NCBI RefSeq assembly: GCF_964204645.1
Contig: NC_134035.1
Location: forward strand, 434,001 to 498,000
Direction: 5' to 3'
DNA from: Tubulanus polymorphus
Taxonomy: Eukaryota > Animalia > Nemertea
Length of the DNA stretch: 64,000 nucleotides
Shown here: positions 30,661 through 59,435 of the stretch, in pieces
How positions within the stretch are numbered: the first letter of the stretch is position 1
Layout of the letters: the number at the start of each line of letters is the position of its first letter
The notes under the pieces: generated by a model
Seen by the model: only the letters and a program-made list of their open reading frames with translations
Databases searched by the model: none
What the model was told of the DNA's origin: nothing
Made by a program: the position numbers and the translations under genes

Positions 30661-30843
30661 ACTGCGTAACTTGACTGAATGACTACACTACTACTGCTGA
30701 TTAACTGACTACCATGACCGATGAAAAAAACTGTTTCGTTGAACTGCTGATTACCCGGATACAGGAAGCAGTTGAATTGTAAATGACCCAGTGAAGCAGT
30801 GAACAAACAAGCCTACCTCGTTACTGGATCATTTACGATTCAT

Positions 30844-31311
30844 CTACTCCCTGTACCCACGCCTAAACAAGACCGATTTTAAATCATGTAAAAGAGCCTT
30901 TGATCTATCCGAAGATAGAAGCTCCTCCCACGGTCCCACGGAACCGCGAGCCACCACCCGCACTTCGGCGCGGCATCGGTCGCTGGACAGAACTCTGTCC
31001 AGCGCCGAAACCGGGGCAGCGGCCAACGGCTCCACGGGGGCAGGAGGAACCCCTCTTACCTCCTCAACCTCCACGACCATCTCCTCTTCTACCAGTTCCG
31101 GCTCCGGCTCCGGCTCCGGGACCGGTTCAAACACCGGTTCCGGTTCCGGCTCCGGCTCCGGCACCGGCACCGCCTCCACCACCTCCGGAACTACCACGAC
31201 GCCGATCTCCTCCCCTCCGCCACCGCGTCGCTCCCCCTCGGGAGGCGCCACACCACCGCGACGAACCGCCGGACGGCGTCGTCTTCGATGCCGAGCGGTG
31301 CGCGTGCCCGT
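30844..31311 (-). CDS. Terminal coding exon (exon 39): Arg run, Pro/Glu/Val low-complexity tract, C-terminal ...LHDLKSVLFRRGYRE*
   Basis: Acceptor tttttttgcag at 31312+. GC-rich 468-nt frame matching ORF 30844..31335. Phase 0 matches the donor of exon 38. Confidence 0.8.
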   Translation of the reverse strand, partial: TGTRTARHRRRRRPAVRRGGVAPPEGERRGGGGEEIGVVVVPEVVEAVPVPEPEPEPEPVFEPVPEPEPEPELVEEEMVVEVEEVRGVPPAPVEPLAAAPVSALDRVLSSDRCRAEVRVVARGSVGPWEELLSSDRSKALLHDLKSVLFRRGYRE

Positions 31312-32838
31312 CTGCAAAAAAAAGAAAACATTCATTTACTAAATGATCGGTTGAAAAGTGATTTTTTACAGAAAATTTTCGGATCAGTAACCGAGCTGAA
31401 ATAATGGAACAATTGATTACATATAAACAAAGAGATAAATCGTCGCGATCTGGGAAACAATATTCTAAAGGGTTAGAAAATAAAGCAAAAAAAAAAATGA
31501 CGATGGCTCGCTGAAAATGAAAGTATTATTTAAGAAAAGATATTATAAGTGATTCATAAAAACTGTTCGTGTGAGAGAAATTCATTCGAAATCAAAACTG
31601 AGAGAAATATAAAAAAAACAGTTAATGTTGAGATGATGCTTACCTCCCGTAACTCCCCCTCCCACAGCCGCCCGTCCACGCGACGGGACCACCTCTGTGC
31701 AAGAGGGTGCGGCTGCCGGAGGGTCCGCTGCCTAGGGCGCCTATCCGGGGAGGCAGCAGCTGGAACGGGGTCTGCCAGCTGGTCATCCAAGACAGGACCA
31801 AGGTTCAAGTGAAAGAGGTCTATGGCCTCTTTCACGTCCTCCGGACCATCCTCCACCGTCTCAATTAATATTGGTTCCACTGTAAAATATAAAATAGAAA
31901 GAAATACATTAACAATCAGGAGAAACAATTAATATATCAAGGGCGGATCCAGTCCCCCGCCTTTAATATCTTGAGGTGCCCTCGAGATATTTTAGGAATT
32001 TCTTTTTCCATTTTATAAAGAAATATCAAGTATTCCCTCATGATGGCTATCGAATAGCCTCGGGCAACAAAATTTCAAAATTTTCTGGGGAGAAACACTT
32101 AAGACCCCTTTCATCCCTTCACGAGTGCTCATGTGCCCTTCAGTAAACCTTCCAAAAATCCTGGCTCAGCCCTTGTAGATTTACAGTGAACCCAGTGTAG
32201 CTAGTAATCTCATTAATACAAAATGGTTGACTTTCCACTTGAAGCGTGATTGGTTGCCAATAATTTGTGACATCATCATGCAGCAGAATGGGGGATGCGG
32301 AAAGAATACAATATCAGTCTCGATGAGTGACATTGATGGGCTGGTTGAGAGTTTAGGGTTGTCGGGACAGGGTTACTACAGTACAGCACAGAAGTAACTA
32401 AACATTGTATCATTGTATTGTACAGTCACATGAACAAACAAATAAATAGGTGTCATACCATCAGCGAACCATCACTTAACCATCAGGTGAACCCCTGCCA
32501 TAACCGCAAACCATGATTCATGATGATTTGAAAATAATTCTAAATGGTAGGCATGGAAACTTGTTAAAATTGATCTAGTTCATAAAATGCAGTCTATTTT
32601 CTCTGATTCAAATCAGTTCAAGAAGACTTTTTTGGCAATGCTTCAATTAACAGCGTAAAATGGATGCAAAAACGATGGTTTATTCAGACCGCGCGGTTTC
32701 ACTGGTCGTATTTAAACCAAATTTGATGCGGTATGTGTTTAAAACAATGAGCGACATATGGTATATGGAGTATATTACTTCATGCCTTGCCAAACACTAA
32801 TTACTTACTCACCAAATCACTCAATTAACCTGTTCTTA

Positions 32839-32905
<67 letters not shown>

Positions 32906-35900
32906 TTTTAGTCAATATCTCACACCTGACGATGATCTCTAGGGTGAGATCGAAACATCGTGTTCTTATGTTTTAGATTGTTTCCATAAATAAATTCTCG
33001 ATTTTAGAATTCTTTTAATTTGTAAATAAAGTTGGTTTTTATCTTATTAACCCTTTCAGTGCTGACTGATCAATACCCGTATACTGCTGGAGATAATTTG
33101 AAAAATTCCACCCAAGTGTGTTGAATAACGGGAATAGCACTACAGTGCGTCTACACCACGGCGCGGTGTATCGTTAGTTACTGATATTTCACGATGTGTC
33201 TGAAAATGGTTGACGCCGCACGAAAATAAATAGGCTTTTGTTATACAGAATTCTGTTGTAAACAGAAAGGGAACAATGATCTCGTTTTTCGATTTCAATT
33301 ATTTCTAGGATGTACCGTCAATAAGACCCGGGGCTTGATGAGGCAGTGGCTGCGTTACTGTGGCAAGCGAGGATCAGCTAGTGGTTACTCCTCAATTACC
33401 GTGCTTCAATTTCGTCGTCACTTCCCGATTGAACTGTAGCCGACTCATCGCTTTATCAATACGCGAAAGTTCACGATTGGTAGAACACTTTATCTGTGTT
33501 GACGCGATGAGGAGAGAATCCCACAATGATAATAAAAAGTCCGAAAATGAAACTTCGAGATAGTAGTTTATTCAACGTTTCGACTATATCCTAATAGTCA
33601 TCTTCAGGAATAATCAGGAATTATTCCTGAAGATGACTATCAGGATATAGTCGAAACGTTGAAATAAACTACTATCTCGAAGTTTCATTTTCGGACTTTT
33701 TATTATCATTGTGGGATTCTCTCCTCAACGCGAAAGTTGCTCGAACAAAAATTCGTTTGATTATATTTGAATTTTGTAAGCGAAAATCGAGTTCGAAAAT
33801 AAACTAATTTCATCGCGTATCAACGAGTGTACCAGTACCTTATTCAATGTACGTTGAGGATACTTAACACGAGCGGGGGGGGGGGGGGGGGATGAAAAAT
33901 GATGTGATCAGTGGAAAGAGAGAGGAGAGAGTATAAATGCAAAAGGTTGTACTTACATCGCGTCAAAAAATTAAGTAGATACCGCGGATCCGCGGCGATA
34001 TTCCGCCTTATCTCTTCGATGACTGTAAAATAAATAAATGAGAAAAATTATTAGTATTTCATTAAATCATGGACGATCAATAGGAGTTTTACGACGTGGA
34101 CAATACAGTCAAAGTCCGTTATACTGCCGCCATACTCCATCAGGAGTGACATGATTTTGGGCATTCTAATGTGCTGGATCCAGTTCCACAAATGAGTTAA
34201 CTCTGATCTCAGAATCTAGTTCTACATTTGGGAGAGTTAATTCTGAACTCAGGATCCAGTTCCACAGATGAGTTAGATTTAACTCTGAACACAGAATCCA
34301 GTGCTACAGTTACGAGTTAAAGTTAACTCTGAACTCAGGATCCAGTTCTACAGTTACGAGTTAAAGTTAACTCTGAACTCGGGATCCAGGACCCAGTTCC
34401 ACAGTTGTGAGTTACAGTTAACTAAATTTATCATCAGTTATCAACAGTAAGGCGCTCAGTAACATCTTTCATATTTCTGTTCAAATCAGAGACAAATTCA
34501 GTATTTCTTGTCATAAAATAGTAACAAATACCGAAAATCAGTAACAGTTTGGGCAGCTCTGCTAAAAATGTCTGGCTACAAACGGACATATCTAAATAGG
34601 ATCATGAATATGTGTAGACTTACCATTTTCCGTCGCATCGACGGGGGCGGCGGGGGCGGCAGCTGCATTTTCTGCCTATAATATAATAACAATCATGATG
34701 TTAAGGTTTAAGAAAACAACAAAAAAATTTGTCAAAATTCATGCAGTTTTTACTAGCGTTTCGATAACACGAATCGTAATTAGAGAGATAATGGGGCCAA
34801 TTCCCTATATGAAATCAAAAGCTGAAATAGAGCCTGCAAACAAGAGCATTTCAAGAGCTCAACTAATGCAGCGCAAAGTTTCCAAACAAACCAAGAAATC
34901 ACAATTTCAAAGTTTTTCTTGATTTCTCTTTATAGTACATTCGCCGTTTATGTATAGCAGTTCCGGTCCATTGGATAATCCTTTCATCATCGCTTTCATG
35001 AAATTTGAACAGTAGGGAACTGGCACGCCAGCTATCCCTTCAGATGGCACCGCTTAGGTATGTGAGACAATCTAATGGGACAGAAAGTGAATTTCAGAGA
35101 CGTCGTCTGCGCGACAAGAAGTCGTCAAATTAGAGCATCGATATTTTTTCGCGCATCTCTTATTGTATTAATAGTGAGCACTGGATCATATCATTACGGT
35201 TAAAAATACCTGACAATTTGATATCTCTAATTTGAGTAGTTTTCACCTGAATATATGACAGCGCAAGGGCTCTAATATCAAAAATGGTAGTTGAATAAGA
35301 AATAACCACAACTAGAAATCATTGTGATCTTGAAAGTATTTTGATATTTCAAAGCTCTTAAAATGGAGGCACTACTCTCAAAGTCGTTATCAGGTCTGGA
35401 ATACCACTAACTCAGTAAACAATTCAAACTTACTCTACGGCGTCGGAGCCGCGGGGAGCGCCGCAATTGCGGTATCTCGTCTCTCTGGAAAAAACAAAAC
35501 GATCAACATTGATTAAATCATCGAAACATTAAATGATTTCTTACTGTTTGGAGAGTTCGGTATCAGAATAAGCTCGGTAGGACCAGAGAGATTCAGGGAT
35601 TCTATATGTGAATAGCTCGGTAGGACCAGAGAGATTCAGGGATTCTATATGTGAATAGCTCGGTAGGACCAGAGAGATTCAGGGATTCTATATGTGAATA
35701 GCTCGGTAGGACCTGCGAGGTTCAGGGATTCTACATGTGAATAGCTCGGTAGGACCAGCGAGGTTCAGGGATTCTATATGCGAATAGCTCGGTAGGACCA
35801 GAGAGATTCAGGGATTCTATATGTGAATAGCTCGGTAGGACCAGAGATTCAGGGATTCTACATGTGAATAGCTCGGTAGGACCAGAGATTCAGGGATTCT

Positions 35901-38900
35901 ATATGTGAATAGCTCGGTAGGACCAGAGATTCAGGGATTCTGTATGTCTTCCTGTTCATTGACGTGTCAGTAATGATCAACACATTCAGTGTATTCGATG
36001 CATTATAATTATTTTCACTTATAGTTCAAACTTACATCAGCTTGCGGCGGCGGCGGCGTCGCAGGTGTTTCAGTCTAAAAAGTAAAAAAACGATATTTCC
36101 ATTGGTTATAAAAACATGAAAATGATTCATTTCAACTTAATATAATAAAACTTGGTTCCACAGTTCTGGACCCAGTCCCACAGTTACAGAACCTGGCTCC
36201 GCAGTTCTGGACCCAGTTCCACAGTTTGAAGTTATGATCTAGTAAAGAGTTACCGATGCTGGATCCTAGTTTTCCAGCCAATGATATTCAGTTAGTTCCG
36301 TGCGATAGTCATCAAGCCGATTGTCATAAATTTCTAGATCTCTCCCTGTCCCGCCGCCCCAGAATTAGGTATTTTTACTTTTTTTTGGTTTCGATTTTTT
36401 GGTGCCACGAGATCCAAAGCAGAAGAATTCTACACTATTTTAATTCTTTTTCCGATGCAGATTTTGAAAACAATAAAATATCCTCATAATCATTGGTGAA
36501 CCACAATGATGATAATCTACAGGACTTAAAACAGGTCAATTTGTCAGTTTTTACCATAGTTTATCATTGTTACAATGGTGGTTGTCACCTATGTTGAGGA
36601 TTTACCGCTAGGGGCAACATTGAAACCCGGTCTATGAAATCGGGCCACGGTTGAGGATTTACCCCTAGGAGAAAATGATGTGGTCTATAAAACCCTGCCC
36701 AGATTATCAATAAACTTATTTGAAATTAGCTTCACTTAAAATGATTTGACTCAAATCAAACTTACTTTAACCGGTCCGACGCGTGCCCGTTTAGGGCTAA
36801 CGGGGTCCTATAAAATAAAAACAAGTTGAAATCAACATCCAGAATTTTCAAACATATTTCTGAAGGAAATCTCAATTTCAGATTATCTTAATAATCTTTG
36901 ATGAGCCACGAAAATGATAATCTACACAACTAAAAAATGTAAATGAATAACCATGAACTGCGGGTGCAGAAACGACAACACCACTTGCAAAAAGGGCTTC
37001 AACAAACTCTCCACAATCACAAGAGGCACGTACTACCATCGCGAAAATCTTGTGCCTTTTTTTCCATGCCCAAAATAGATGTTCAAGCCACTTGGAAAGT
37101 GGTTTTTTTCGCATCGACAAACTCTCGTCGCAATCACAAATCATACTTGTCGTAAGCTTAAACTTTCACAAGATCCCGTCGGCAGACGGACAGACGGAGA
37201 GACAGGCGGACAGACGGAGAGACAGGCGGACAGACGGAGAGACAGGCGGACAGACGGAGAGACAGGCACACAGACGGAGAGACAGGCGCACAGACGGAGA
37301 GACAGGCGGACAGGCGGAGAGACAGGCGCACAGACGGAGAGACAGGCACACAGACGAACGGACTGTAAAATGATTTGATGAAATTCAAACTCACCGATGC
37401 CGGTACCTCGAGCTTCCTCTTCTATAAAATAAAAAATCAACTTTAGTTTAACAACGTCAACAAAAATTCAGACATATTTCATCTGCAGTCGTTTGTGTTC
37501 AACTGTAAATTCAATAGAAATGTTCACAATATTTACCGGCACATTCACGCACGTGTGGAATTCATTTCTCTACATAAAAAGAAAAACAAGAGCTCAATTT
37601 AGCATTTATGAAAATCAGAATAAATTATCTCAAATCTCGCATTTTTTTAATAGCTTGGTTGACAGGGTAGACTATTGAAATATCATTTCGGAAAATTAAA
37701 AAAAAAAGAACTCGCTCAGCGCGATAAACACAGTTTTTGAAGGAAGAGGGAACTATCGATAGGGCAATATACATATGTCCAAAACAATGATCCTTGGAAA
37801 GTTCGAATTCTGCACACAAATGTGATCAAAAAAAGAATAAACGTGCGTTTTTCAATTTTTTCATCATTCAAGCCGGGATTCTCATTCGGCGAAGGTGAAA
37901 AACTTTTTTGCTCGTTTTCCACTGAATTTGTTCCACGGATGGGAGTAAAAAAAAAATTCTACTTTTGTTTGACTTTTCTTCAAATTTCGGGAGGCGGTTC
38001 CCGTAAACTAAGCTATTTAAGAAAAAGCCTCATCTGGTGAACCATCACAAATAGTTATTATTACGTTATAGGTTGTTACTAATGATCGGATTTATGAGAA
38101 CCACAACGGTATAGTGTACATTATGGAATAAAGTTCAAGTTTTTGTCAGTAGATGGCAGGCAGGTGGTATTTATAAAGTGACTGGGTGTCAACATGTGTA
38201 ACTGAAATTGTCTATTGTAAACTTACGTCAATTTGCACAATACGCGCGATTTCCGATTCCTAGAAATGTAAAGAAAAAAAATTCTGAAATCAAGTTTTGA
38301 ATAACTATACCACGGATGAAAGATTCCATGATCTAAATTCTTAGTTGACCCTCGATTTAGAGACTATTTTGAGGATAATTGAACCGATGGATGCTGCGTG
38401 ACATGATTTCAATATTCTACTAACTCGGTCTGAAGAATATTTACATCGATACAAAACTGTGACCGAGCCGCAACTTTTAAACATTCTTAGTTTCACTTAA
38501 AAACATTGCTTCACGCTATTATCAATACCAATTTTACGAATAATATGAACTCGGTAAGATAAATATTCACATCGATACAAACTGTGACCGAGTGCGACTA
38601 CTTTCAAACACTCTTTAGATATAACTGGCTTCAGCTGTGATTAATTTAGGACCGAAGATACTACTCTATATAGCTTAATCAGTAGCGGATCCAAACTAGA
38701 TTCCATTGTATTCCCGAATATAGTCAGAATAACATTTTTTTTTTTTAAGTAACTCGATCCAACAGAATGTCCCAGATACAAGGAAATTAGAACATATTTC
38801 AAAATTTTTATTGGTTAGGACCCCTAAACTGCGGCAGCTGCAGCGGTCAGGCAAAAAATATCTTTAAGGAATATAGCCAAATTCACCAGTCCCCCACGGA

Positions 38901-50900: not shown

Positions 50901-53900
50901 ATACAAATAAACCAAAAATAGACAGGTTTGATATCTGTAACCGAACTGGATTTAGAGCCGCCTTTTTTCAGGTCAAAAACGATAAGTTACGAAGGGAATC
51001 GAACTCCGATTTAATTCTGTAACTTTGATGATAATTCTGACGAAAAACTCATAAGAATCGGTTGTTTCAAGGTAACAGAAGAATTAATACTTACTGCCTT
51101 TGCTGCTGTTTGTTTACGCTGATGACATGAAAGAAAAAAAGAGAATTCATTTTAGTTTTGTTATTTCACGTTCACACGTTAAATACAGTAAATATAAATA
51201 CATCAATAAGAGATACATAAAATATATGCACATATATCCGTGAGCAAATGCTTCCAGATTTTACTGTGTGTGCTAATGTTATATAAAAGAAACTTGATAT
51301 ATAAAATAATTCTAAGTGACGGGAATTTATTTCATTGAAAGCAGGATTATTTTCATGACTTTGTTCCTGGTATGAAATATACGATGAAAATCACAAACAA
51401 ATCATCGGCTGTCAGAAAGAAATAAACACCACAGAAATTCCATGATACAGAAAACTTCTCACTTACTTCTGGTGCTGTTGTTCTTGTCGTCGTCGAATTC
51501 TGTCGCAATAAAAAAAAAGAAGAGAATTCATGAATTTCTTGCATTATTTCATATTCAGTAGCAAACATTAAACACAGGAGATCATATTATAATTAAAACA
51601 AAAGACAAGTTTTATATCTGTATTCGGGAAAAACCTCGATATTTCAGTATTCGTTTGTTTTAGGGTTTTATTTAAACAATATAAAGTCCATTAAACAGAA
51701 AAATTCAAACTTACTGTATTCGTCGCTGTTTGTCTGTTCTGTTGCAATAAAAGAAAAGAGAATTCATTAATTTCTTGCATTAAAACTCTGATCTCTGTAA
51801 CTTTGATATTTCTGTATTCGTTTGTTTTACAGTTTGATTCAAACGATATAGAGTCCATGAAACAGAAAAATTCAAACTTCTGTTGTCATTGCTGCTGCTG
51901 CTGCTGCTGCTGCTGCCGCTGCAGCAGCAAACTGTCGCGATGAAAGAAAAGTAATTAATTGCGTTGTTATTTCATATTGAGTAGCACACATTTAACAGAG
52001 ATCATGATTAAAACGAATACCAGACAGGTTTAATATCTGGAAAAAGATTTCATCAGAGTAAACTTGTTACAATGAGAGAAAACCAAAAACACCACGCGAT
52101 AAATCAGTTTGATAATTCCTTTTATCGGGATATTTGCACTTTAAAAATGACAATTGTAATTATCATCATTACTATTATCGTTGTTACTACGAGTATGATG
52201 ATAATTATGAAAGACGAAATCAGTTACAACTTGCTTAAAGAGTTATGAAGTTTCAATGACTCTCAGCGAAAATGGTAGATATCATATTCCACCGAGGAGA
52301 TTAATAGAAAACTTACAAAATGAATTTCCGCTTCTACTGTTATCTAGAAAAGAGAATTAACATTCATATCTATAAAAATCATTCATTAAATGATCAATGA
52401 ATCTAAGCACCAGTTTTATGGAGACCAATGTTTACTTTAATAAATCTGGGTTAACTTGATTAAAAGTGAATTCAGTTAACTGAGCACGGGTTAAACATAA
52501 TACCAGTCTAACCGGCTTCAGAGGACCAGGTTAAACAAAACAGGTTTACATAAAATGATATCATAAAATCTAAACTTACTGGCGGCGGAATTTCCTCCAG
52601 GACTTCTGGCTGTTAGAAAAGAACAATAACATTCACATTCAGGTCAAAAACGATAAGTTATGAAGGGAATCAAACTCCGATTAAATTCTGTAATTTTGAT
52701 GATAATTCTGTTGAAAAACTCATAAGAATCGGTTGTTTCAAGGTAACAGAAGAATTAATACTTACTGCCTTTGCTGCTGTTTGTTTACGCTGATGACATG
52801 AAAGAAAAAAAGAGAATTCATTTTAGTTTTGTTATTTCACGTTCACACGTTAAATACAGTAAATATAAATACATCAATAAGAGATACATAAAATATATGC
52901 ACATATATCCGTGAGCAAATGCTTCCAGATTTTACTGTGTGCGCTAATGTTATATAAAAAAAACTTGATTATAAAATAATTCTAAGTGACGGGAATTTAT
53001 TTCATTGAAAGCAGGATTATTTTCATGACTTTGTTCCCGGTATGAAATATACAATGAAAATCACAAACAAATCATCGTCTGTCAGAAAGAAATAAACACG
53101 ACTAGAAATTCCATGATACAGAAAACTTCTCACTTACTTCTGGTGCTGTCGTTTTTGTCGTCGTCGTCGTCGTCGCTGAATTCTGTCGCAATAAAAAAAG
53201 AAGAGAATTCATGAATTTCTTGCATTATTTCATATTCAGTAGCAAACATTAAACACAGGAGATCATATTATAATTAAAACAAAAGACAAGTTTTATATCT
53301 GTATTCGGGAAAAACCTCGATATTTCAGTATTCGTTTGTTTTAGGGTTTTATTTAAACAATATAAAGTCCATTAAACAGAAAAATTCAAACTTACTGTAT
53401 TCGTCGCTGTTTGTCTGTTCTGTTGCAATAAAAGAAAAGAGAATTCATTAATTTCTTGCATTAAAACTCTGATCTCTGTAACTTTGATATTTCTGTATTC
53501 GTTTGTTTTACAGTTTGATTCAAACGATATAGAGTCCATGAAACAGAAAAATTCAAACTTCTGTTGTCGCTGCTGCTGCTGTTGCAGCAGCAAACTGTCG
53601 CGATGAAAGAATAGTAATTAATTGCGTTGTTATTTCATATTGAGTAGCACACATTTAACAGAGATCATTATTAAAACGAATACCAGACAGGTTTAATATC
53701 TGGAAAAAGATTTCATCAGAGTAAACTTGTTACAATGAGAGAAAACCAAAAACACCACGTGATAAATCAGTTTGATAATTCCTTTCATCGGGATATTTGC
53801 ACTTAAAAAATGACAATTGTAATTATTATCATTACTATTATCGTTATTACTACGAGTTTGATGATAATTATGAATTATATGCGCAAATATAAGCGTATGT

Positions 53901-56598
53901 GTAAGTGAGCGCGCACACAAACTGAAGACGAAATCAGTTACAACTTGCTTAAAGAGTTATGAAGTTTCAATGACTCTCAGCGAAAATGGTAGATATTATA
54001 TTCCACCGAGGAGATTAATAGAAAACTTACAAAATGAATTTCCGCTTCTACTGTTATCTAGAAAAGAGAATTAACATTCATATCTATAAAAATCATTCAT
54101 TAAATGATCAATGAATCTAAGCGCCAGTTTTATGGAGACCAATGTTTACTTTAATAAATCTGGGTTAACTTGATTAAAAGTGAATTCAGTTAACTGAGCA
54201 CGGGTTAAACATAATACCAGTCTAACCGGCTTCAGAGGACCAGGTTAAACAAAACAGGTTTACATAAAATGATATCATAAAATCTAAACTTACTGGCGGC
54301 GGAATTTCCTCCAGGACTTCTGGCTGTTAGAAAAGAACAATAACATTCACATTCAGGTCAAAAACGATAAGTTATGAAGGGAATCGAACTCCGATTTAAT
54401 TCTGTAACTTTGATGATAATTCTGACGAAAAACTCATAAGAATCGGTTGTTTCAAGGTAACAGAAGAATTAATACTTACTGCCTTTGCTGCTGTTTGTTT
54501 ACGCTGATGACATGAAAGAAAAAAAGAGAATTCATTTTAGTTTTGTTATTTCACGTTCACACGTTAAATACAGTAAATATAAATACATCAATAAAAGAGA
54601 TACATAAAATATATGCACATATATCCGTGAGCAAATGCTTCCAGATTTTACTGTTTGCGCTAATGTTATATAAAAAAAACTTGATATATAAAATAATTCT
54701 AAGTGATGGGAATTTATTTCATTGAAAGCAGGATTATTTTCATGACTTTGTTCCCGGTATGAAATATACGATGAAAATCACAAACAAATCATCGTCTGTC
54801 AGAAAGAAATAAACACCACAGAAATTCCATGATACAGAAAACTTCTCACTTACTTCTGGTGCTGTTGTTCTTGTCGTCGTCGAATTCTGTCGCAATAAAA
54901 AAAAAAAAGAGAATTCATGAATTTCTTGCATTTTTTCATATTCAGTAGCAAACATTAAACACAGGAGATCATATTATAATTAAAACAAAAGACAAGTTTT
55001 ATATCTGTATTCGGAAAAACCCTGATATTTCTGTATTCGTTTGTTTTAGGGTTTTATTTAAACAATATAAAGTCCATTAAACAGAAAAATTCAAACTTAC
55101 TGTATTCGTTGCTGTTTGTCTGTTCTGTTGCAATAAAAGAAAAGAGAATTCATTAATTTCTTGCATTAAAACTCTGATATCTGTAACTTTGATATTTCTG
55201 TATTCGTTTGTTTTACAGTTTGATTCAAACGATATAGAGTCCATGAAACAGAAAAATTCAAACTTCTGTTGTCGTTGCTTGCTGCTGCTGCAGCAGCAGC
55301 AGCAGCAGCAGCAGCAAACTGTCGCGATGAAAGAATAGTAATTAGTTGCATTGTTATTTCATATTGAGTAGCACACATTTAACAGAGATCATGATTAAAA
55401 CGAATACCAGACAGGTTTAATATCTGGAAAAAGATTTCATCAGAGTAAACTTGTTACAATGAGAGAAAACCAAAAACACCACGCGATAAATCAGTTTGAT
55501 AATTCCTTTTATCGGGATATTTGCACTTTAAAAATGACAATTGTAATTATCATCATTACTATTATCGTTATTACGAGTTTGATGATAATTATGAACTACA
55601 TGCGCAAATATAAGCGTATGTGTAAGTGAGCGCACGCACAAACTGAAGACGAAATCAGTTACAACTTGCTTAAAGAGTTATGAAGTTTCAATGACTCTCA
55701 GCGAAAATGGTAGATATCATATTCCACCGAGGAGATTAATAGAAAACTTACAAAATGAATTTCCGCTTCTACTGTTATCTAGAAAAGAGAATTAACATTC
55801 ATATCTATAAAAATTATTCATTAAATGATCAATGAATCTAAGCGCCAGTTTTATGGAGACCAATGTTTACTTTAATAAATCTGGGTTAACTTGATTAAAA
55901 GTGAATTCAGTTAACTGAGCACGGGTTAAACATAATACCAGTCTAACCGGCTTCAGAGGACCAGGTTAAACAAAACAGGTTTATATAAAATGATATCATG
56001 AAATCTAAACTTACTGGCGGCGGAATTTCCTCCAGGACTTCTGGCTGTTAGAAAAGAACAATAACATTCACATTCATTAGAATTATTTGAAAAATAAGCA
56101 TCTGGGGGCGGTTGCACGTCAATCGAGACTTAAGTCCGAAAGTGGTCTTAAATCTTAAGACTGGTCTTAAGTTGTTAGATTGGCTATAGAACCAAGTTGG
56201 TCTTAGACTGATCTTAAGTCTAAGCCCTGACTATGGAACGGGCCCCAGAAAATGTTTCAGTTTTGAATATTGATTGTAACATCAAATGATAACCGGTCCC
56301 GGGTTCAATTCCACATTTAATTCAATATTATATATAATATCTGTATCCTGGATGGTTAGTGAGGTGTAGTGGATGGTATCTTTGATGGGTTGGTATGAAC
56401 GCCAACACCAGGGGGAGTGGGGGCGGGGGATTTAAATCTAGCTCCGATATATCAATGAAATAGTGCGCACTATCTCAAAAATATCGACGACGTAGTGCAC
56501 ATCTACTCAGGTAAGTATACTAGGTATCAATGTAGATACAGACATATTATTGGAACAAAAAAATGAATACTTACTATCTGCTTTCGTTTTGGAGCCAT
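30844..56598 (-). CDS. Microexon-rich gene (39 predicted coding exons, ~709 aa); putative nuclear, largely disordered protein of unknown family
   Basis: Exons in transcript order: 56575-56602 (ATG at 56596-56598) MAPKRKQI; 56015-56044 PEVLEEIPPP; 55752-55778 ITVEAEIHF; 55101-55124 NRQTATNT; 54854-54886 NSTTTRTTAPE; 54480-54503 RKQTAAKA; second copy 54294-54323, 54031-54057, 53396-53419, 53138-53182 (NSATTTTTTKTTAPE), 52766-52789; third copy 52580-52609, 52317-52343, 51715-51738, 51467-51499, 51095-51118; 50659-50703 HHTGTRSTLASPDIE; 47183-47263; 46710-46829; 45932-45958 TLKEKRKME; 45805-45831 RERKKKALE; 45525-45572 TKAAAAAAAAKTAAAF; 44946-44990 KPPTTTTAAAAIPAR; 44619-44654 TKPTAAAAIPAR; 41279-41326 KPTPTATAAVAAIPAR; 40975-41001 KPTAAAPKE; 40680-40715 CKQITTTTTTKE; 40461-40496 VTRKRRRRSVDE; 40011-40046 QPVSPPKIPRDE; 39185-39238 NDDFPEPPPPEPEAPTII; 38227-38259 ESEIARIVQID; 37395-37421 KRKLEVPAS; 36766-36807 DPVSPKRARVGPVK; 36036-36074 TETPATPPPPQAD; 35434-35484 RDEIPQLRRSPRLRRRR; 34624-34675 (phase 0-1); 33957-34022 (1-1); 31644-31879 (1-0); 30844-31311 (terminal). 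Each has a pyrimidine-rich YAG acceptor, and each non-terminal exon has a GT donor (mostly GTAAGT). Phases chain without a stop. Confidence 0.8.
31644..31879 (-). CDS. Exon 38 (236 nt): EPILIETVEDGPEDVKEAIDLFHLNLGPVLDDQLADPVPAAASPDRRPRQRTLRQPHPLAQRWSRRVDGRLWEGELRE
   Basis: tattttacag acceptor and GAG|gtaagc donor; phase 1-0; paralogous copy on the + strand at 24007-24236. Confidence 0.8.
32922..32963 (+). ncRNA. Hammerhead-like motif of a second Penelope-like family, next to a (TA)n tract
   Basis: ACAC-CTGACGA-T-GATCTC(tagggt)GAGATC-GAAA-CA-TC-GTGT. Confidence 0.55.
33472..33727. mobile_element. Very short inverted Penelope pLTR insertion with two hammerhead motifs (33568-33613 on -, 33621-33667 on +)
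   Basis: Same sequence as the ends of the 42.1-44.4 kb element, ~105-bp inverted arms, one-sided tail, and 11-bp direct repeat acgcgaaagtt at 33461-33471 and 33728-33738. Confidence 0.88.
33957..34022 (-). CDS. Exon 37 (66 nt, phase 1-1): (V)IEEIRRNIAADPRYLLNFLTR(L)
   Basis: ttattttacag acceptor and gtaagt donor. Its phases fit exon 36 (52 nt, ends phase 1) and exon 38 (starts phase 1). Confidence 0.75.
35572..35945. repeat. 41-43-bp intronic minisatellite (inverted copy at ~25470-25650)
   Basis: GCTCGGTAGGACCAGAGAGATTCAGGGATTCTATATGTGAATA units. Confidence 0.92.
37183..37357. repeat. 20-bp minisatellite (CAGACGGAGAGACAGGCGGA)
   Basis: Directly visible. Confidence 0.92.
39666..39863. mobile_element. 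MITE with CAG(G/A)G(C/T)TGCCAACC TIRs
   Basis: cagggctgccaacc ... ggttggcaactctg. It interrupts an intron whose paralogue (~36610) lacks it. Confidence 0.65.
40187..40308. repeat. (CCGA)n microsatellite
   Basis: Directly visible. Confidence 0.97.
42167..42212 (-). ncRNA. Minimal type I hammerhead ribozyme (Penelope pLTR, left arm, same strand as host gene)
   Basis: Reverse complement of 44292-44337. Confidence 0.75.
42522..43286 (-). CDS. Penelope ORF C-terminal fragment: RT thumb (VYRKPT..YL) plus GIY-YIG endonuclease
   Basis: Motifs VYRKPTNAESYLHY and GIYKIPCKVCDKVYIGETGRNLNQRIKEH. The RT core is absent (truncated). Confidence 0.9.
   Translation of the reverse strand: MKFAVYRKPTNAESYLHYFSFTSPDIKLGLAQGLFLRALRICDPSFLPDEIHHINQSLKKLAYPDFLLKKALLKARTTHFRNNNLRTPTLATDKQPIIVPYVPFLENSKVSLRSLNKQLIFKYNNKLSNILINNKPKTESLNCGIYKIPCKVCDKVYIGETGRNLNQRIKEHKLDVKNFKPESGVASHVFQTSHNFDFANAELVYPCSDKTRRHILESALIIENSNNVVNLNNGFSPHNKLISKFLCKLVKLNT
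43290..43982 (+). CDS. Inverted second copy of the Penelope GIY-YIG endonuclease fragment
   Basis: Identical protein from DIKLGLAQG to KLNT*. The N-terminus of ORF 43236 is the antisense of the spacer. Confidence 0.85.
   Translation, partial: DIKLGLAQGLFLRALRICDPSFLPDEIHHINQSLKKLAYPDFLLKKALLKARTTHFRNNNLRTPTLATDKQPIIVPYVPFLENSKVSLRSLNKQLIFKYNNKLSNILINNKPKTESLNCGIYKIPCKVCDKVYIGETGRNLNQRIKEHKLDVKNFKPESGVASHVFQTSHNFDFANAELVYPCSDKTRRHILESALIIENSNNVVNLNNGFSPHNKLISKFLCKLVKLNT
44292..44337 (+). ncRNA. Minimal type I hammerhead ribozyme (Penelope pLTR)
   Basis: TTATTC-CTGAAGA-T-GACTAT(taggat)ATAGTC-GAAA-CG-TT-GAATAA. Stem I, catalytic core, stem II and a loopless palindromic stem III are visible. 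Confidence 0.75.
46710..47263 (-). CDS. Exons 18-19 (47183-47263, 46710-46829): EIETVFELKLGTSLRASFQKTLTRKHP-QVIVDTPRVHAIVVVRGPKVAVDNCYEYAHELRDRLVAQE, possible degenerate KH-like domain
   Basis: 81-nt and 120-nt phase-0 exons with canonical splice sites. The hydrophobic pattern resembles a type I KH fold lacking the GxxG loop (by eye). Confidence 0.65.
47721..48213. mobile_element. MITE with CAG(A/T)GTTGCCACTT TIRs
   Basis: cagagttgccactt ... aagtggcaacactg, flanked by the direct repeat tatatt. Confidence 0.7.
48700..48976. mobile_element. MITE with CATAGGCGTCCCC TIRs
   Basis: cataggcgtcccc ... ggggacgcctatg. Confidence 0.7.
49263..49450 (+). mobile_element. tRNA-derived SINE-like element
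   Basis: A-box-like GTGGCCAAGTGG and B-box GGTTCAAACCC, followed by a non-tRNA body. Confidence 0.5.
49790..49965. repeat. 37-bp tandem repeat
   Basis: GGTTGGCTTGWTTCTTAACTCAAAACCGTACCGATAC, ~4-5 copies. Confidence 0.9.
50967..56076 (-). repeat. Three tandem copies of a ~1.7-kb unit carrying five coding microexons plus one exon-like segment with a defective donor
   Basis: The PEVLEEIPPP exon recurs at 56015, 54294 and 52580 (spacing 1721 and 1714). Introns are near-identical between copies. Confidence 0.95.
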
Positions 56599-57947
56599 AT
56601 TTCTAGAAAACAAAATAGAGACATCATAAACATTTGAGCGACGACACTTATCATCATTTGAAAATTGGCATATCGATTGTAAACAAATCCGCCAGATGAC
56701 AGATCTGTAATCAGTCAGTGCTATGGAGGGTAGCCCTTGGGTTTTAATAGAAACAATTTCAGAGACAACACATTAACAACTTTCGTCAACGAATTCCCTT
56801 GAGAATCATCTGTATCAACCAGTTACAGATGATTCTCAAGGGAATTCGCTGACGAAAGTTGCACTTGGTAAATACACAAAATATAAATGAATTACCCAAA
56901 TATTTCCTTGATTTTAGGAAAATTTCCGAAATTTATTTTTGGAAATATTTCCAAACTAGGAATTATCATTTCAAAATTCCAAAGTTTTTCCCAATTTCCG
57001 CGTTCTGTGGGAACCATGAGTATGCCTGTTTATCTAAGTGCTGAGGTGGAATTTTTTAAATCTTACATCTCCAGCACTTTCGAGTATTGATTAGTTCAAT
57101 GAAATGCTTAACGCACCTTAAAATTTCAACAAAATATTTTGTTTAGGGTTTCATTCAGTAAACCATCAGGCCATACATGCAGTTCAACAGTTTTGGACGC
57201 AATGGGATACCGGCAAGGCTAATGAATGAATAAGACCCTAAAGATATTTTCTGTTGAAGACATTTTGAGGGCACCAACGATTCCCTACCATTTTTCATTA
57301 CCAGTTGAAATTTGGTTTATTTCAGAATGTTTTAAATCTAAAAAACTGATCAAGAAATGTGGAACTGGGGGGTCCAGAACAGTGGAACTGGATCCTGATA
57401 GCCGCTTTAAATGAAATCTTTTTGACATTTTTGTTGAAGAAATTAAATTTGTGTAGGGTGCCAAAAATCCCAGATCAGTTATCCAAAGTAATACACACTA
57501 AATTTTTTATTTTCGTGTTTAAACTTTTCTCAACTTGGTCTCAACAGGACCAGTGAAACTGTATAGTCCAGATAAACCATCGTTTCTATATCCATCTGAC
57601 ACTGTTTTCAAAGGATTGTCAAAAAATCGTCTTTAACTGATTTGAATCAGAGAAAAGAGACTCCATTTTATGAACTAAATAAATTTTAACAATATGTTCC
57701 ATGCCTACCATTTTAAATTATTTTCAAACCATCAAGAATCATATTTCAGAGGCATGGAAACACAAGAAACATTTTGTTAGAATTTCAAAAATGGCTGATC
57801 TTTTGTAATTGCAACATGAGAAAATGAAGACTTTTTGGCAATTCTTCAATATGGTGTAAAGTGGATGTAAATACAACTGTTTATTCAGACTGCACATATT
57901 CACTCTGGTCGTATCGAGACCAAATTGAGGTGTTTTCAAAAGTTTAA

Positions 57948-58840
57948 CCCCTTTAGTGTGTCTACAGCACAGTGTGGTATATAAATCAGTGATAGATTTT
58001 GCTAATTCACCGCACTGTGGTGTCTTGATGTAATAAGTAATTAGTTTTTATCTCTATTGAAAGATGACAGCACCTGTCAAACATAGTGAAATACTAGTAC
58101 CGTATTTTCCGGCCAATAAGCCGATTTTCTAGCCTCAGATTTTTACCCAAAATATCGTGATCGGCTTATTGGGCGGATACGATCTGACATAAAAAATCAC
58201 TTCCCGATCTATGCCACTCTAATGCTCTCAATGATCGTCAAAATCAAGAAAAGTGGTCGATATTTATTGGAGGTCATTATTTACTACCAATTATAATCTA
58301 TTTTGAACTATTTTATTTTTACTTTGATTGTTCCATCACCGCACAGCGGCAATGGTATACATTTATATAATGCGCGAGTTCATCGCACTACCACACTACC
58401 ACGTGTCAGTTCATACATTAGTATTTATGCAAATCAGCAGTGAGCCGCGTACTGCGTGTATAGTAATCAGCTGAGTGATTCTATATATAGCACAGTCACT
58501 CGGCGATGATAGTATACACAGCACTCTCACACATCGGCGGGCGCTACTGTCAGCCTCTTAAATGTCAATTAAGACGAACTAATTGACAAATCAGTGAATT
58601 AAAATCTCCGATGAAGGGCCTCGGCTTATTGGGCGAAGCTTTATGAAATCCATGTATTTTAGGCTAAAAAACTGCCCTTGGCTTATTGGCTGGAAAATAC
58701 GGTAGCTAATGATACACCGCGCCGCGGTGTAGACGCACTATAGTGGTATTCCCGTTATTCAACAAACTAGGGCAGAATTTTTCAAAATTTTAAAATTATC
58801 TCCAGCACTATAAGCTATTGATCAGTCAGCACTGAAAGGG
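57948..58840. mobile_element. piggyBac-like non-autonomous element (TTAA-flanked); related end at ~33051-33175
   Basis: TTAA|cccctttagtg ... cactgaaaggg|TTAA. Confidence 0.6.
58100..58702. mobile_element. Tc1/mariner-pogo-type MITE nested in the TTAA element
   Basis: TA|ccgtattttccggccaataagcc ... ggcttattggctggaaaatacgg|TA. Confidence 0.8.
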
Positions 58841-59120
58841 TTAAGAGAAATATCACAAAGTAACGGATGTCATGCAAAAATTATGAAGACATCGGTCCAT
58901 TCCGTTTCATGAACGTAAAAATAAAACCCTGTAAATCAATTCAACATTCACTAAATTCACCTGCATTAATGAAGAAATTTAAAATCGATTTTAAGTGTAA
59001 GATATTTTTTATGTAAGTGGGTCCTAGTCTAATTGGGTCTAACAGTCAGTTTCACAAAAATTTTATTGGCGAGATAAACTTTAGTTAATGATGAAATTTT
59101 ATAATCGATTCTAAGTGTAA

Positions 59121-59340
59121 GGCTAAACAAAAATGATACCTTGTTTCTCCGCAGCGGCCGGGTCATTTTTGTAAAATATGATAAAATCTATAAACAGTTC
59201 ATTTCTATAGCGGCCGGGTCTGTTATGGTAAAATTGATCACGATTTTTAAAAAAGTAATGTATAGGGTAGATAGGCGGCCGGCCGGGTCAACATTTAAGT
59301 TCAGCAGAGTGGAGAAACAAGGTATCAATTTTTTTTAGCC
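59121..59340. mobile_element. PIF/Harbinger-type MITE
   Basis: TAA|ggctaaa...gataccttgtttctcc ... ggagaaacaaggtatc...ttagcc|TAA. An empty paralogous site sits at ~58984-59010. Confidence 0.8.
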
Positions 59341-59435
59341 TAAGATATTCTTCATCTAAGTGGGTCCAAGCCTAATTGGGTCCAAGAGTCAGTTTCTCGA
59401 AAATTGTACAGCTATTTTCTATTTCGACTTGACTT

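What the first reader, a model, noticed from the sequence alone, without database searches (positions are those of the whole stretch)
30844..56602. Hidden 39-exon gene built almost entirely of symmetric microexons, encoding an apparently non-secreted nuclear protein
Seen in sequence: 39 minus-strand GT-AG exons chain into one stop-free ~709-aa frame, 32 are 51 nt or shorter, and 34 consecutive internal exons are phase 0-0. The three non-phase-0 exons near the 3' end (0-1, 1-1, 1-0) also fit each other. That many frame-preserving exons in a row is very unlikely by chance. Established: long runs of symmetric microexons are known from Schistosoma micro-exon genes (MEGs), which encode secreted proteins diversified by exon skipping. 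Inference: this is a MEG-like architecture used for an intracellular protein (starts MAPKRK, no hydrophobic leader), and any subset of exons 2-35 could be skipped in frame. Standard gene predictors could easily miss most of it.
Basis: partly seen in the sequence, partly recalled or inferred. Interest (0 to 1): 0.93.

Follow-up and report, generated by a model that had tools for sequence, protein, structure and literature searches.

The report
Multicopy 41-exon microexon gene family
This is a real-looking animal gene made of 41 exons, 34 of them 51 bases or shorter, that encodes a non-secreted, probably nuclear, mostly disordered protein with no known relatives; it is one of about nine near-identical copies of a larger family, and its expression has not been tested.

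Summary
Thirty-four exons are 51 nt or shorter, 36 consecutive exons are phase 0-0, and the last three junctions are 0-1, 1-1 and 1-0.

It is not a single hidden gene. The genome holds about nine near-identical copies and more than 35 distant relatives in 33-45 kb tandem arrays near contig ends. Earlier notes of this scan (s1-492696, s1-500187) saw the family on other DNA.

The three other copies I read are also intact, with 41, 40 and 36 exons.
- All 21 exon indels are multiples of three, against 35 of 182 in non-coding DNA.
- dN/dS is 0.2-0.45, in microexons and large exons alike.
- The 60-nt intron flanks are better conserved than deep intron.

So this is a constrained coding gene whose middle grew by duplication of exon cassettes. 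It has no signal peptide, several polybasic clusters, and no hit in Pfam, PDB or 1.84 billion proteins.

It meets a structural definition of micro-exon genes (MEGs). It lacks their signal peptide and their fast protein evolution. No RNA data exist, so splicing and exon skipping are untested.

The parts
56575..56598 (-). Exon 1 (24 nt), start codon, peptide MAPKRKQI. An acceptor AG lies 4 nt upstream of the ATG, so a non-coding 5' exon or a spliced leader is likely.
   Evidence: 95-100% conserved in three paralogs
50967..56076 (-). Tandem triplication (period about 1.72 kb) of a block with five live microexons and one dead cassette; holds exons 2-16.
   Evidence: The C8 paralog has only two blocks.
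56015..56044 (-). Exon 2, 30 nt, phase 0-0, PEVLEEIPPP
55752..55778 (-). Exon 3, 27 nt, phase 0-0, ITVEAEIHF
55264..55318 (-). Dead cassette, copy 1 (55 nt). The acceptor is kept, but GTTTGA stands where its relatives have GTAAGTTTGA. Its length is no longer a multiple of 3. Not in the model.
55101..55124 (-). Exon 4, 24 nt, phase 0-0, NRQTATNT
54854..54886 (-). Exon 5, 33 nt, phase 0-0, NSTTTRTTAPE
54480..54503 (-). Exon 6, 24 nt, phase 0-0, RKQTAAKA
54294..54323 (-). Exon 7, 30 nt, phase 0-0 (copy of exon 2)
54031..54057 (-). Exon 8, 27 nt, phase 0-0 (copy of exon 3)
53559..53594 (-). Dead cassette, copy 2 (36 nt), donor GTTTGA. Not in the model.
53396..53419 (-). Exon 9, 24 nt, phase 0-0 (copy of exon 4)
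53138..53182 (-). Exon 10, 45 nt, phase 0-0, NSATTTTTTKTTAPE (copy of exon 5, longer by an ACG-repeat run)
52766..52789 (-). Exon 11, 24 nt, phase 0-0 (copy of exon 6)
52580..52609 (-). Exon 12, 30 nt, phase 0-0 (copy of exon 2)
52317..52343 (-). Exon 13, 27 nt, phase 0-0 (copy of exon 3)
51878..51931 (-). Dead cassette, copy 3 (54 nt), donor GTTTGA. Not in the model.
51715..51738 (-). Exon 14, 24 nt, phase 0-0 (copy of exon 4)
51467..51499 (-). Exon 15, 33 nt, phase 0-0 (copy of exon 5)
51095..51118 (-). Exon 16, 24 nt, phase 0-0 (copy of exon 6)
50659..50703 (-). Exon 17, 45 nt, phase 0-0, HHTGTRSTLASPDIE
47183..47263 (-). Exon 18, 81 nt, phase 0-0; first half of a 67-aa stretch that is not low-complexity
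   Evidence: 97-100% in paralogs
46710..46829 (-). Exon 19, 120 nt, phase 0-0; only one frame is open; 11 copies in the genome at 95-100% aa identity
45932..45958 (-). Exon 20, 27 nt, phase 0-0, TLKEKRKME
45805..45831 (-). Exon 21, 27 nt, phase 0-0, RERKKKALE (cassette family)
45525..45575 (-). Exon 22, 51 nt, phase 0-0, Ala-rich (cassette family). In the C8 copy the acceptor has moved 3 nt, still in frame.
44946..44993 (-). Exon 23, 48 nt, phase 0-0, QKPPTTTTAAAAIPAR (cassette family)
44619..44654 (-). Exon 24, 36 nt, phase 0-0, TKPTAAAAIPAR (cassette family; no counterpart found in paralog C9b)
41279..41326 (-). Exon 25, 48 nt, phase 0-0, KPTPTATAAVAAIPAR (cassette family)
40975..41001 (-). 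Exon 26, 27 nt, phase 0-0, KPTAAAPKE. Chimeric cassette: its upstream flank is 98% like that of exon 25, its downstream flank 88% like that of exon 5.
40680..40715 (-). Exon 27, 36 nt, phase 0-0, CKQITTTTTTKE (upstream flank 94% like that of exon 6)
40461..40496 (-). Exon 28, 36 nt, phase 0-0, VTRKRRRRSVDE (polybasic cluster; donor GTCAGT)
40011..40046 (-). Exon 29, 36 nt, phase 0-0, QPVSPPKIPRDE
39376..39402 (-). Exon 30, 27 nt, phase 0-0, DINLFDDLW (acidic-hydrophobic motif)
39185..39238 (-). Exon 31, 54 nt, phase 0-0, NDDFPEPPPPEPEAPTII
38227..38259 (-). Exon 32, 33 nt, phase 0-0, ESEIARIVQID
37537..37569 (-). Exon 33, 33 nt, phase 0-0, RNEFHTCVNVP
37395..37421 (-). Exon 34, 27 nt, phase 0-0, KRKLEVPAS (NLS-like)
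36766..36807 (-). Exon 35, 42 nt, phase 0-0, DPVSPKRARVGPVK (NLS-like; related to exon 29)
36036..36074 (-). Exon 36, 39 nt, phase 0-0, TETPATPPPPQAD
35434..35484 (-). Exon 37, 51 nt, phase 0-0, RDEIPQLRRSPRLRRRR (polybasic)
34624..34675 (-). Exon 38, 52 nt, phase 0-1 (46 nt in the C8 copy, same phase)
33957..34022 (-). Exon 39, 66 nt, phase 1-1
31644..31879 (-). Exon 40, 236 nt, phase 1-0. Its C-terminal part is 46-57% identical in subfamily B, where the counterpart read in the C6 copy has the same phase.
30844..31311 (-). Exon 41, terminal, 468 nt including the TAG. It encodes a polybasic start, an acidic PE-rich middle, and a C-terminal domain of about 50 aa that is 45-47% identical to subfamily B.
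23987..26115 (+). Inverted, rearranged partial copy of exons 37-40 with their intron flanks (85-99% complementary), tail to tail with the gene. A partial inverted exon-40 copy lies 7-8 kb downstream of exon 40 at eight of the nine full copies; the C8 locus is rearranged.
56603..63407 (.). Upstream flank duplicated together with the gene in the other copies (93-99%); probably holds the promoter and any 5' non-coding exon.

Best explanation
This is a functional, lineage-restricted protein-coding gene. It is one of about nine near-identical copies (subfamily A) of a larger family.

Shown:
- 41 exons with canonical splice signals join into one 731-aa frame.
- The middle of the gene is a string of symmetric microexons of 24-54 nt, each adding 8-18 residues of Thr/Ala/Pro/Lys/Arg/Glu-rich sequence.
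- This string grew, and still changes, by tandem duplication of exon-plus-intron-flank cassettes, unequal exchange between cassettes, gain and loss of cassettes, and triplet slippage inside exons. Selection keeps every live exon in frame and keeps the splice-site flanks.

Inferred:
- The product is a non-secreted, largely disordered nuclear (possibly nucleolar or chromatin-bound) protein. It has several polybasic NLS-like clusters and acidic patches.
- It has two small modules that are not low-complexity: exons 18-19, and a helical C-terminal domain of about 50 aa that defines the family.
- The microexon region acts as a tunable linker or motif carrier.

Unknown: whether the cassettes are always included or are skipped in combinations.
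For: Gene model:
- Exon chain, phases and splice signals.
- Strand-specific excess of microexon-like candidates: 27 against 0.

Paralogs:
- Three other copies I read in full are intact: 41 exons/735 aa, 40 exons/728 aa and 36 exons/671 aa. Every exon has AG and GT, and each copy has a single stop at the same C-terminus.
- One lost acceptor in the C8 copy is replaced by an AG 3 nt downstream, in frame.
- Exon indels are multiples of 3 in 21 of 21 cases, against 35 of 182 in introns and flanks (p = 7e-14).

Selection:
- dN/dS is 0.34, 0.45 and 0.30 for the three paralogs.
- Against the most diverged copy, dN/dS is 0.30 in microexons (p = 1e-5) and 0.20 in large exons (p = 4e-5).
- In that copy, substitution rates by codon position run 2nd < 1st < 3rd.
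- The 60-nt intron flanks diverge less than deep intron (1.14% against 1.70% pooled, p = 4e-6).

Family:
- Nine full-length exon-41 copies at 97-100% identity, and more than 35 distant copies.
- In subfamily B the terminal exon has pS 0.21 against pN 0.04-0.07, and the C-terminal 60 aa differ at no more than two positions among the nine copies read. The intron before exon 40 has the same phase in both subfamilies.

Protein:
- No hydrophobic segment; polybasic clusters at residues 244, 335, 420, 455 and 585; pI 8.7.

Cassette origin:
- Flanks are up to 98% identical while the exons are 50-70% identical. The pattern is mosaic: the upstream flank of exon 26 matches exon 25 and its downstream flank matches exon 5.
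Against: - There is no transcript evidence. The runs that hold the locus are DNA with no splice joints. The only possible RNA run (small, 2015) holds none of it, even the 468-nt terminal exon.
- No canonical AATAAA or ATTAAA lies within 1.8 kb after the stop.
- The nonsynonymous rate (0.029 against C8) is about equal to the deep-intron rate (0.030). The low dN/dS therefore rests partly on a high synonymous rate at CpG-rich third positions.
- Exon indels fall largely in triplet repeats, which slip in threes without any selection.
- Gene conversion among copies could mimic conservation.
- Nuclear location rests on sequence features only.
- No homologue, domain or confident fold is available. AlphaFold2 on the C-terminal 75 aa gave mean pLDDT 58.
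Confidence: 0.7

Rival explanations
1. It is a true micro-exon gene in the schistosome sense. It would encode a secreted or surface protein whose variants arise by skipping of symmetric microexons, under diversifying selection.
For: - It meets the structural definition of MEGs in PMC7653826: 36 of 41 exons are under 70 nt and divisible by 3, with a longest run of 18.
- It is multicopy and clustered, as some MEG families are.
- Raw exon divergence exceeds that of the intron flanks.
Against: - No signal peptide or hydrophobic segment follows the ATG. The start region is basic in both subfamilies (MAPKRK / MPKATKK). All MEG products are said to have a signal peptide (PMC4350168).
- dN/dS is 0.2-0.45, not near or above 1.
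- The excess exon divergence disappears once CpG content is taken into account.
- Only 34% of the CDS lies in exons of 36 nt or less.
Confidence: 0.05
2. It is an untranslated or decaying amplified segment. The copies would look intact only because the duplications are recent and gene conversion homogenises them, and the frame would be kept by triplet slippage alone.
For: - Copies differ by only 0.6-4%.
- No RNA evidence exists.
- No canonical polyadenylation signal was found.
- dN is about equal to intron divergence.
- The locus lies in segmental duplications rich in repeats.
Against: - dN/dS is significantly below 1 in both exon classes.
- Zero of 21 exon indels break the frame, while a cassette that lost its donor has drifted to 55 nt.
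- No splice dinucleotide is lost without an in-frame replacement, where about 4 hits are expected in the C8 copy.
- No stop occurs in four copies.
- Subfamily B is 45-57% identical in protein yet keeps the intron phase, and its C-terminal domain is nearly invariant over 21% synonymous divergence.
Confidence: 0.12
3. The family is an amplified gene family of the genetic-conflict type, or the cargo of a large duplicating unit. The inverted partial copy beside the gene copies would form a hairpin with the parent 3' exons and feed small-RNA control of the family. This adds to the best explanation rather than replacing it.
For: - A partial inverted exon-40 copy lies 7-8 kb downstream of exon 40 at eight of the nine full copies; here it spans exons 37-40 at 85-99%.
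- The duplicated unit spans at least 46 kb, and copies lie within about 3 Mb of contig ends.
- The product is basic and nuclear-looking.
Against: - No small-RNA or transcript data exist.
- No terminal repeats or target-site duplications of a mobile unit were found.
- The arrangement may be a passive by-product of one ancestral rearrangement that was then copied.
Confidence: 0.1

Closest known systems
Flatworm micro-exon genes (MEGs; Schistosoma, Echinococcus, Hymenolepis)
   Same: Both have long runs of symmetric microexons with lengths divisible by three, between longer end exons. Both occur as gene families expanded by tandem duplication and are hard for gene finders (PMC7653826, PMC4350168). 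This gene passes the structural rule of PMC7653826.
   Different: - This gene has no signal peptide, while all MEG products are reported to have one.
- dN/dS is 0.2-0.45 here, against values near or above 1 for several mature MEG products (PMC4350168).
- Only about half of the CDS is in microexons.
- Exon skipping is untested.
- MEGs are reported as restricted to platyhelminths.
SmVAL6 (Group 2 venom-allergen-like gene of S. mansoni)
   Same: It is a protein of the VAL group that lacks signal peptides, and part of its gene has a MEG-like run of very small symmetric exons in a gene of many exons (PMC4350168). This is a precedent for the architecture outside secreted proteins.
   Different: SmVAL6 has a known SCP/TAPS domain and is thought to be a VAL-MEG fusion. 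The gene here has no known domain and is multicopy.
Symmetric-exon arrays that encode disordered regions (for example the titin PEVK region, from my own knowledge; general principle in PMC3632108)
   Same: Exon-phase symmetry goes together with intrinsic disorder. Growth is by tandem duplication of exon blocks, including a triplicated block. The units are low-complexity and rich in Pro, Glu, Val and Lys.
   Different: The exons here are much shorter (24-54 nt against roughly 75-90 nt). The protein is small and nuclear-looking, not a giant muscle spring. There is no sequence homology.
Neural microexons that depend on the Srrm/eMIC splicing factor (from my own knowledge)
   Same: These exons also have very strong 5' splice sites and long pyrimidine tracts. 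Twelve of the 40 acceptors have a TGC within 22 nt (mostly 5-8 nt) of the 3' splice site, which is the cis-signature reported for that class.
   Different: Those microexons are usually single exons inside structured or interaction surfaces of conserved genes, not arrays. Here the TGC motif is limited to one cassette family and is probably inherited by duplication. No tissue data exist.

Membership tests
Micro-exon gene, structural definition (Olson et al. 2020, PMC7653826) | At least seven exons | tested here: met
   41 exons; 36-41 in three paralogs
Micro-exon gene, structural definition (Olson et al. 2020, PMC7653826) | [quoted passage not shown] | tested here: met
   36 of 41
Micro-exon gene, structural definition (Olson et al. 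2020, PMC7653826) | [quoted passage not shown] | tested here: met
   Longest run 18; a second run of 17
Schistosome-type MEG (DeMarco 2010 as summarised in PMC4350168) | Most of the coding region is made of very small symmetric exons | tested here: inconclusive
   51% of the CDS is in exons of 51 nt or less, and 34% in exons of 36 nt or less
Schistosome-type MEG (DeMarco 2010 as summarised in PMC4350168) | The product has a signal peptide (secreted or membrane-anchored) | tested here: not met
   The basic N-terminus MAPKRKQI follows directly on the ATG. The highest 19-residue hydropathy is 1.13 and there is no hydrophobic segment. Subfamily B also starts basic. An unseen upstream coding exon is not excluded.
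Schistosome-type MEG (DeMarco 2010 as summarised in PMC4350168) | Protein variants made by skipping of symmetric exons | not testable with these tools
   No RNA run holds the locus
Schistosome-type MEG (DeMarco 2010 as summarised in PMC4350168) | Accelerated protein evolution (high dN/dS of the mature part) | tested here: not met
   dN/dS 0.30-0.45 overall; 0.30 in microexons against the most diverged copy
Schistosome-type MEG (DeMarco 2010 as summarised in PMC4350168) | Restricted to Platyhelminthes | not testable with these tools
   The organism is coded. An earlier first-reader note on this genome describes a lineage-specific TALE homeobox gene as SPILE-like (s1-487751), which points to a spiralian, but I did not check it.
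Any known protein domain family | Significant match of any exon of at least 20 aa to Pfam, PDB sequences or the large protein collections | tested here: not met
   Pfam gave only a low-complexity PE-repeat hit far below its cut-off. HMMER against 1.84 billion representatives gave no hit below 1e-5. The word search found no candidate. PDB matches had E of 0.4 or more. The Atlas gave unnamed bacterial clusters at 0.90 or less.

The most novel reading that the evidence does not exclude
A combinatorial microexon system outside flatworms and outside secretion. The 30-odd symmetric cassettes would be included in different combinations, by tissue or by gene copy. A small amplified family would then yield many variants of one nuclear disordered protein. 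The inverted partial copy beside the gene copies would supply hairpin-derived small RNAs that control the family.
Probability: 0.12. Interest if true: 0.8.

Novelty: new variant of a known kind. Interest (0 to 1): 0.55.

Why it matters
- It extends the micro-exon-gene architecture, so far tied to secreted flatworm proteins, to an orphan and apparently nuclear protein family in another genome.
- It shows the architecture under ordinary purifying selection. Frame-symmetric microexon arrays are therefore not in themselves a mark of antigenic variation.
- The locus is a natural series for study. It holds live, chimeric, lost and dead cassettes with nearly identical intron flanks, in four or more intact paralogs with 36-41 exons. 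This makes it a good substrate for asking how 24-nt exons are recognised and how they are born and die.
- Gene finders are likely to fragment or miss the whole family of about 45 or more loci.

Tried and rejected
- Transcript evidence. The run search found three DNA-like runs and one possible RNA run. Laying all four on window 30801-36800 (6,000 letters) gave intron coverage and no splice joints in X1-X3, and nothing from X4. This says nothing either way about expression.
- Homology, exon by exon:
  - Pfam.
  - HMMER of exon 41 against 1.84 billion proteins: only PE-repeat low-complexity hits.
  - Word search with exon 40: none.
  - ESM Atlas.
  - PDB sequences with exons 19 and 40 and a profile of the C-terminal domain. 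All blank.
- Fold. AlphaFold2 on the C-terminal 75 aa, with a six-row alignment of two subfamilies, gave mean pLDDT 58 and four helices. This is too weak for a fold search, so none was run.
- Retrocopy as proof of splicing. In all genome matches exon 41 lies about 330 nt from exon 40, as in the parent, so no processed copy was seen. The inverted copy in the window keeps intron flanks.
The raw numbers hold. The cause is that exons are 20% CpG-context against 8% in introns, CpG sites change 3-5 times faster, and the flanks are constrained. At non-CpG sites, exon and deep intron do not differ (p = 0.18).
- An apparent match of the exon 18/19 junction peptide downstream of a subfamily B gene turned out to be a tandem repeat.
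- Introner-like spread of introns as the origin of the cassettes. I rejected this because the exons of related cassettes are themselves similar and multi-exon blocks correspond to each other.
- tRNA-like sequence in intron 17: ARAGORN found no tRNA.
No full model was built for subfamily B.
- The joined protein went to no database, family or fold tool.


Full report
**What is there**

I read the minus strand from 57000 to 30000. I listed every short open stretch between a pyrimidine-rich acceptor and a GTRAG-type donor, and fixed the remaining boundaries by string search.

Joining the exons gives 41 exons and 2,196 nt, or 731 codons. The only stop is the TAG at 30846-30844.

Exon lengths run from 24 to 54 nt for 35 exons. 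The others are 66, 81, 120, 236 and 468 nt. Exons 2-37 are all phase 0-0. Exons 38-40 are 0-1, 1-1 and 1-0. Median intron length is 353 nt. Donors are almost all GTAAGT, often GTAAGTTTGAAT, and acceptors follow long pyrimidine tracts.

As a chance control, a strict microexon filter finds 27 candidates on the minus strand of the gene region, 25 of them divisible by three. It finds none on the plus strand of the same region and five in the rest of the window.

**The exons are not independent**

- Exons 2-16 are a five-exon block repeated three times with a period of about 1.72 kb.
- Each block also carries a sixth cassette. Its acceptor is kept, but GTTTGA stands where its relatives have GTAAGTTTGA. 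The three copies are 55, 36 and 54 nt long, so one has left the frame.
- Exons 4-6 and 21-27 share intron flanks at up to 98% identity, while the exons themselves are 50-70% alike. The pattern is mosaic: exon 26 has the upstream flank of exon 25 and the downstream flank of exon 5.
- About 17 symmetric exons are independent, which is still far beyond chance.

**It is a family, not a hidden singleton**

The window is contig C11:434001-498000 of a 268-Mb assembly. Searching that genome exon by exon gave the following.
- Exon 40: 11 copies at 96-100% identity.
- Exon 19: 11 copies at 95-100%.
- Exon 41: 9 full-length copies at 97-100%.
- These lie on C11 (0.39, 0.47, 1.66, 2.00, 2.08 and 2.95 Mb, plus a rearranged one near 3.01 Mb), on C9 (0.96 and 1.58 Mb) and on C8 (13.96 Mb).
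- A second subfamily, B, is 46-57% identical over the end of exon 40 and 45-47% over the last 50 aa of exon 41. Exon 40 finds about 40 such copies and exon 41 about 35. They lie at roughly 33-kb spacing on C6 (0.65-1.75 Mb), roughly 45-kb spacing on C3 (0.42-1.33 Mb), and on C8 (15.1-16.3 Mb).
- All of these places lie within about 3 Mb of a contig end.

The duplicated unit of subfamily A reaches from at least window 17.7 kb to 63.4 kb. Eight of the nine full copies have a partial inverted exon-40 copy 7-8 kb downstream; the C8 locus is rearranged. In this window the inverted copy spans exons 37-40 with their intron flanks. Notes s1-492696 and s1-500187 of this scan describe the same kind of gene in other windows. 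The first of them coincides with the C11 2.95-Mb copy.

**Is it a constrained coding gene?**

I fetched three paralogous loci and projected or rebuilt every exon.
- The C11 0.39-Mb copy has 41 exons and 735 aa.
- The C9 1.58-Mb copy has 40 exons and 728 aa; no counterpart of exon 24 was found.
- The C8 copy has 36 exons and 671 aa, with two blocks instead of three.
- In all three, every exon keeps AG and GT, and the single stop falls at the same C-terminus.
- In the C8 copy the acceptor of exon 22 is lost, and the first CAG of the exon serves instead, three bases on and in frame.

Whole-locus alignments give exon indels that are multiples of three in 21 of 21 cases. Flanks and deep introns give 35 of 182 (p = 7e-14).

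Substitution patterns:
- dN/dS is 0.34, 0.45 and 0.30 for the three paralogs.
- Against the most diverged copy it is 0.30 in microexons (p = 1e-5) and 0.20 in the large exons (p = 4e-5).
- In that copy, rates by codon position run 2nd < 1st < 3rd.
- The 60-nt intron flanks are more conserved than deep intron (1.14% against 1.70% pooled, p = 4e-6). This fits working splice signals.

Raw exon divergence (0.6, 1.9 and 4.0%) does exceed flank divergence (0.4, 1.1 and 2.1%), as noted before. But exons are 20% CpG-context against 8% in introns, and CpG sites change 3-5 times faster. At non-CpG sites, exon and deep intron do not differ. I see no sign of diversifying selection.

Two caveats apply. dN is about equal to intron divergence, and triplet repeats slip in threes by themselves.

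In subfamily B the terminal exon shows pS 0.21 against pN 0.04-0.07. The C-terminal 60 aa differ at no more than two positions among the nine copies read, and the intron before exon 40 has the same phase as here.

**The product**

- Size and composition: 731 aa, pI 8.7; Ala, Pro, Glu, Arg and Thr each make up 10-12%.
- Hydrophobicity: no hydrophobic segment (maximum 19-residue hydropathy 1.13), so no signal peptide or membrane span.
- Charge: polybasic clusters at residues 244, 335, 420, 455 and 585, plus KRKLEV. There are strongly acidic stretches, including DINLFDDLW-NDDFPEPPPPEPE and a PE-rich run.
- Start: both subfamilies begin with a basic peptide directly after an acceptor that lies 3-4 nt before the ATG. 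The different spacing argues that the upstream exon is non-coding.
- Modules: exons 18-19 (67 aa) and the C-terminal ~50 aa are the only parts that are not low-complexity.

I infer a nuclear, mostly disordered protein in which the microexon string is a linker or motif carrier. This is inference from sequence only.

From memory, RRSPRL in exon 37 resembles the arginine-anchor motifs that bind the nucleosome acidic patch (HMGN RRSARLS). This is a lead, not a test.

**Searches**

The joined 731-aa sequence was built only inside local scripts. There I used it for frame, composition, substitution counts, and local BLAST against the window and the fetched loci. It was sent to no database, family or fold tool.

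Exon by exon, nothing was found in any library:
- Pfam.
- HMMER of exon 41 against 1.84 billion representatives: no hit below 1e-5, all in the PE repeat.
- Word search with exon 40.
- ESM Atlas.
- PDB sequences.

AlphaFold2 on the C-terminal 75 aa gave four helices at mean pLDDT 58, too weak to search with.

**Expression**

The run search listed three runs of one 2024 study that hold 58-68% of the words of window 30801-40800, and one possible RNA run of 2015 that holds none. I laid all four on window 30801-36800, 6,000 letters. X1-X3 cover the introns and show no splice joints, so they are DNA. X4 has nothing. Transcription, junctions and exon skipping are therefore untested.

Two mild negatives remain. 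No AATAAA or ATTAAA lies within 1.8 kb of the stop, and the sequence there is a 160-bp tandem repeat.

**Comparison with what is known**

The gene meets the structural rule for micro-exon genes used for flatworms (at least 7 exons, at least half under 70 nt and divisible by 3, a run of at least 4; PMC7653826). It has 36 such exons of 41, with a longest run of 18.

It fails two hallmarks of schistosome MEGs as summarised in PMC4350168: a signal peptide on every product, and a high dN/dS of the mature part. That paper also reports a precedent for a MEG-like part in a member of the VAL group that lacks signal peptides (SmVAL6).

More broadly, it fits the known link between exon-phase symmetry, disorder and modular growth (PMC3632108). 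From my own knowledge it recalls the triplicated exon blocks of titin's PEVK region, but with far shorter exons.

I file it as a new variant of a known kind. The architecture is MEG-like, in an orphan, non-secreted, purifying-selected, multicopy family.

**Verdict**

- The gene is very probably real and coding (about 0.7-0.8).
- The nuclear role is plausible but inferred.
- Combinatorial splicing is open.
- Interest is moderate (0.55). It would rise with any transcript evidence of cassette skipping.

Noticed in passing
G000 C6:0.65-1.75 Mb, C3:0.42-1.33 Mb, C8:15.1-16.3 Mb (loci L015-L018, L022-L032): Subfamily B has about 40 copies, at roughly 33-kb spacing on C6 and roughly 45-kb spacing on C3. 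Each has an intact 130-aa terminal exon. The last 60 aa differ at no more than two positions among the nine copies read, despite about 21% synonymous divergence. A candidate start exon reads MPKATKKTRGAG. Only a few microexon candidates (27-39 nt) were seen, and no full model was built.
   Followed up: partly
window 23987-26115 (+) against 31622-35947 (-): An inverted, rearranged partial copy of exons 37-40 with intron flanks (85-99% complementary). A partial inverted exon-40 copy lies 7-8 kb downstream of exon 40 at eight of the nine full copies. Read-through transcription would give a long hairpin. Whether it makes small RNAs is unknown.
   Followed up: partly
window 42120-44400 (intron 24): Two inverted copies of the 3' part of a retroelement with a GIY-YIG endonuclease domain (Pfam PF01541, 27.7 bits, above the cut-off), of Penelope-like type. 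The ORFs are at 42522-43286 (-) and 43236-43982 (+). A short palindromic remnant of the same element end sits in intron 39 (33503-33732) and is extremely high-copy in the DNA runs.
   Followed up: partly
window 56777-56861: A near-perfect palindrome of about 38 bp per arm lies 180-260 nt upstream of the ATG. It is found at the same place in the other copies listed (77-91% in the reverse-strand self-match). It may be a small inverted-repeat element or a regulatory hairpin.
   Followed up: no
window 58098-58704: A dispersed repeat of about 610 bp is inserted in the upstream flank of this copy, the neighbouring C11 copy and the C9 copies, but not the others. More than 30 copies at 94-95% lie across the genome. 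It is useful as a marker for the order of the duplications.
   Followed up: no
window 30021-30655; 35566-35947; 37183-37356; 40187-40307: A 160-bp tandem repeat (4 copies, 97% matches) lies about 190 nt after the stop codon, each unit with a CAG|GTAAGT site. The introns hold a 43-bp minisatellite of 9 copies, a 20-bp repeat of 8.7 copies, and (CGAC)30.
   Followed up: no
whole gene against paralogs: CpG sites change 3-5 times faster than other sites in exons and introns alike, which points to a CpG-methylating genome. Non-CpG third codon positions (4.2%) diverge more than deep intron (2.4%) against the C8 copy. I cannot explain this; it may be small numbers or constraint or conversion in the introns.
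   Followed up: partly
window 17700-24000 against 30700-56700: Between copies, the gene body including its introns is 96-99% identical, while the co-duplicated downstream flank is only 73-92%. This suggests gene conversion or selection confined to the gene, or faster turnover of the repeat-rich flank.
   Followed up: no
donor sites of exons 4, 9, 14, 21, 22, 28, 34, 36, 37 and others: Many donors, including those of otherwise unrelated exons, continue as GT[ACG]AGTTTGAA. This is either a trace of very old common cassette ancestry or an intronic splicing element. I did not check whether it is common genome-wide.
   Followed up: no
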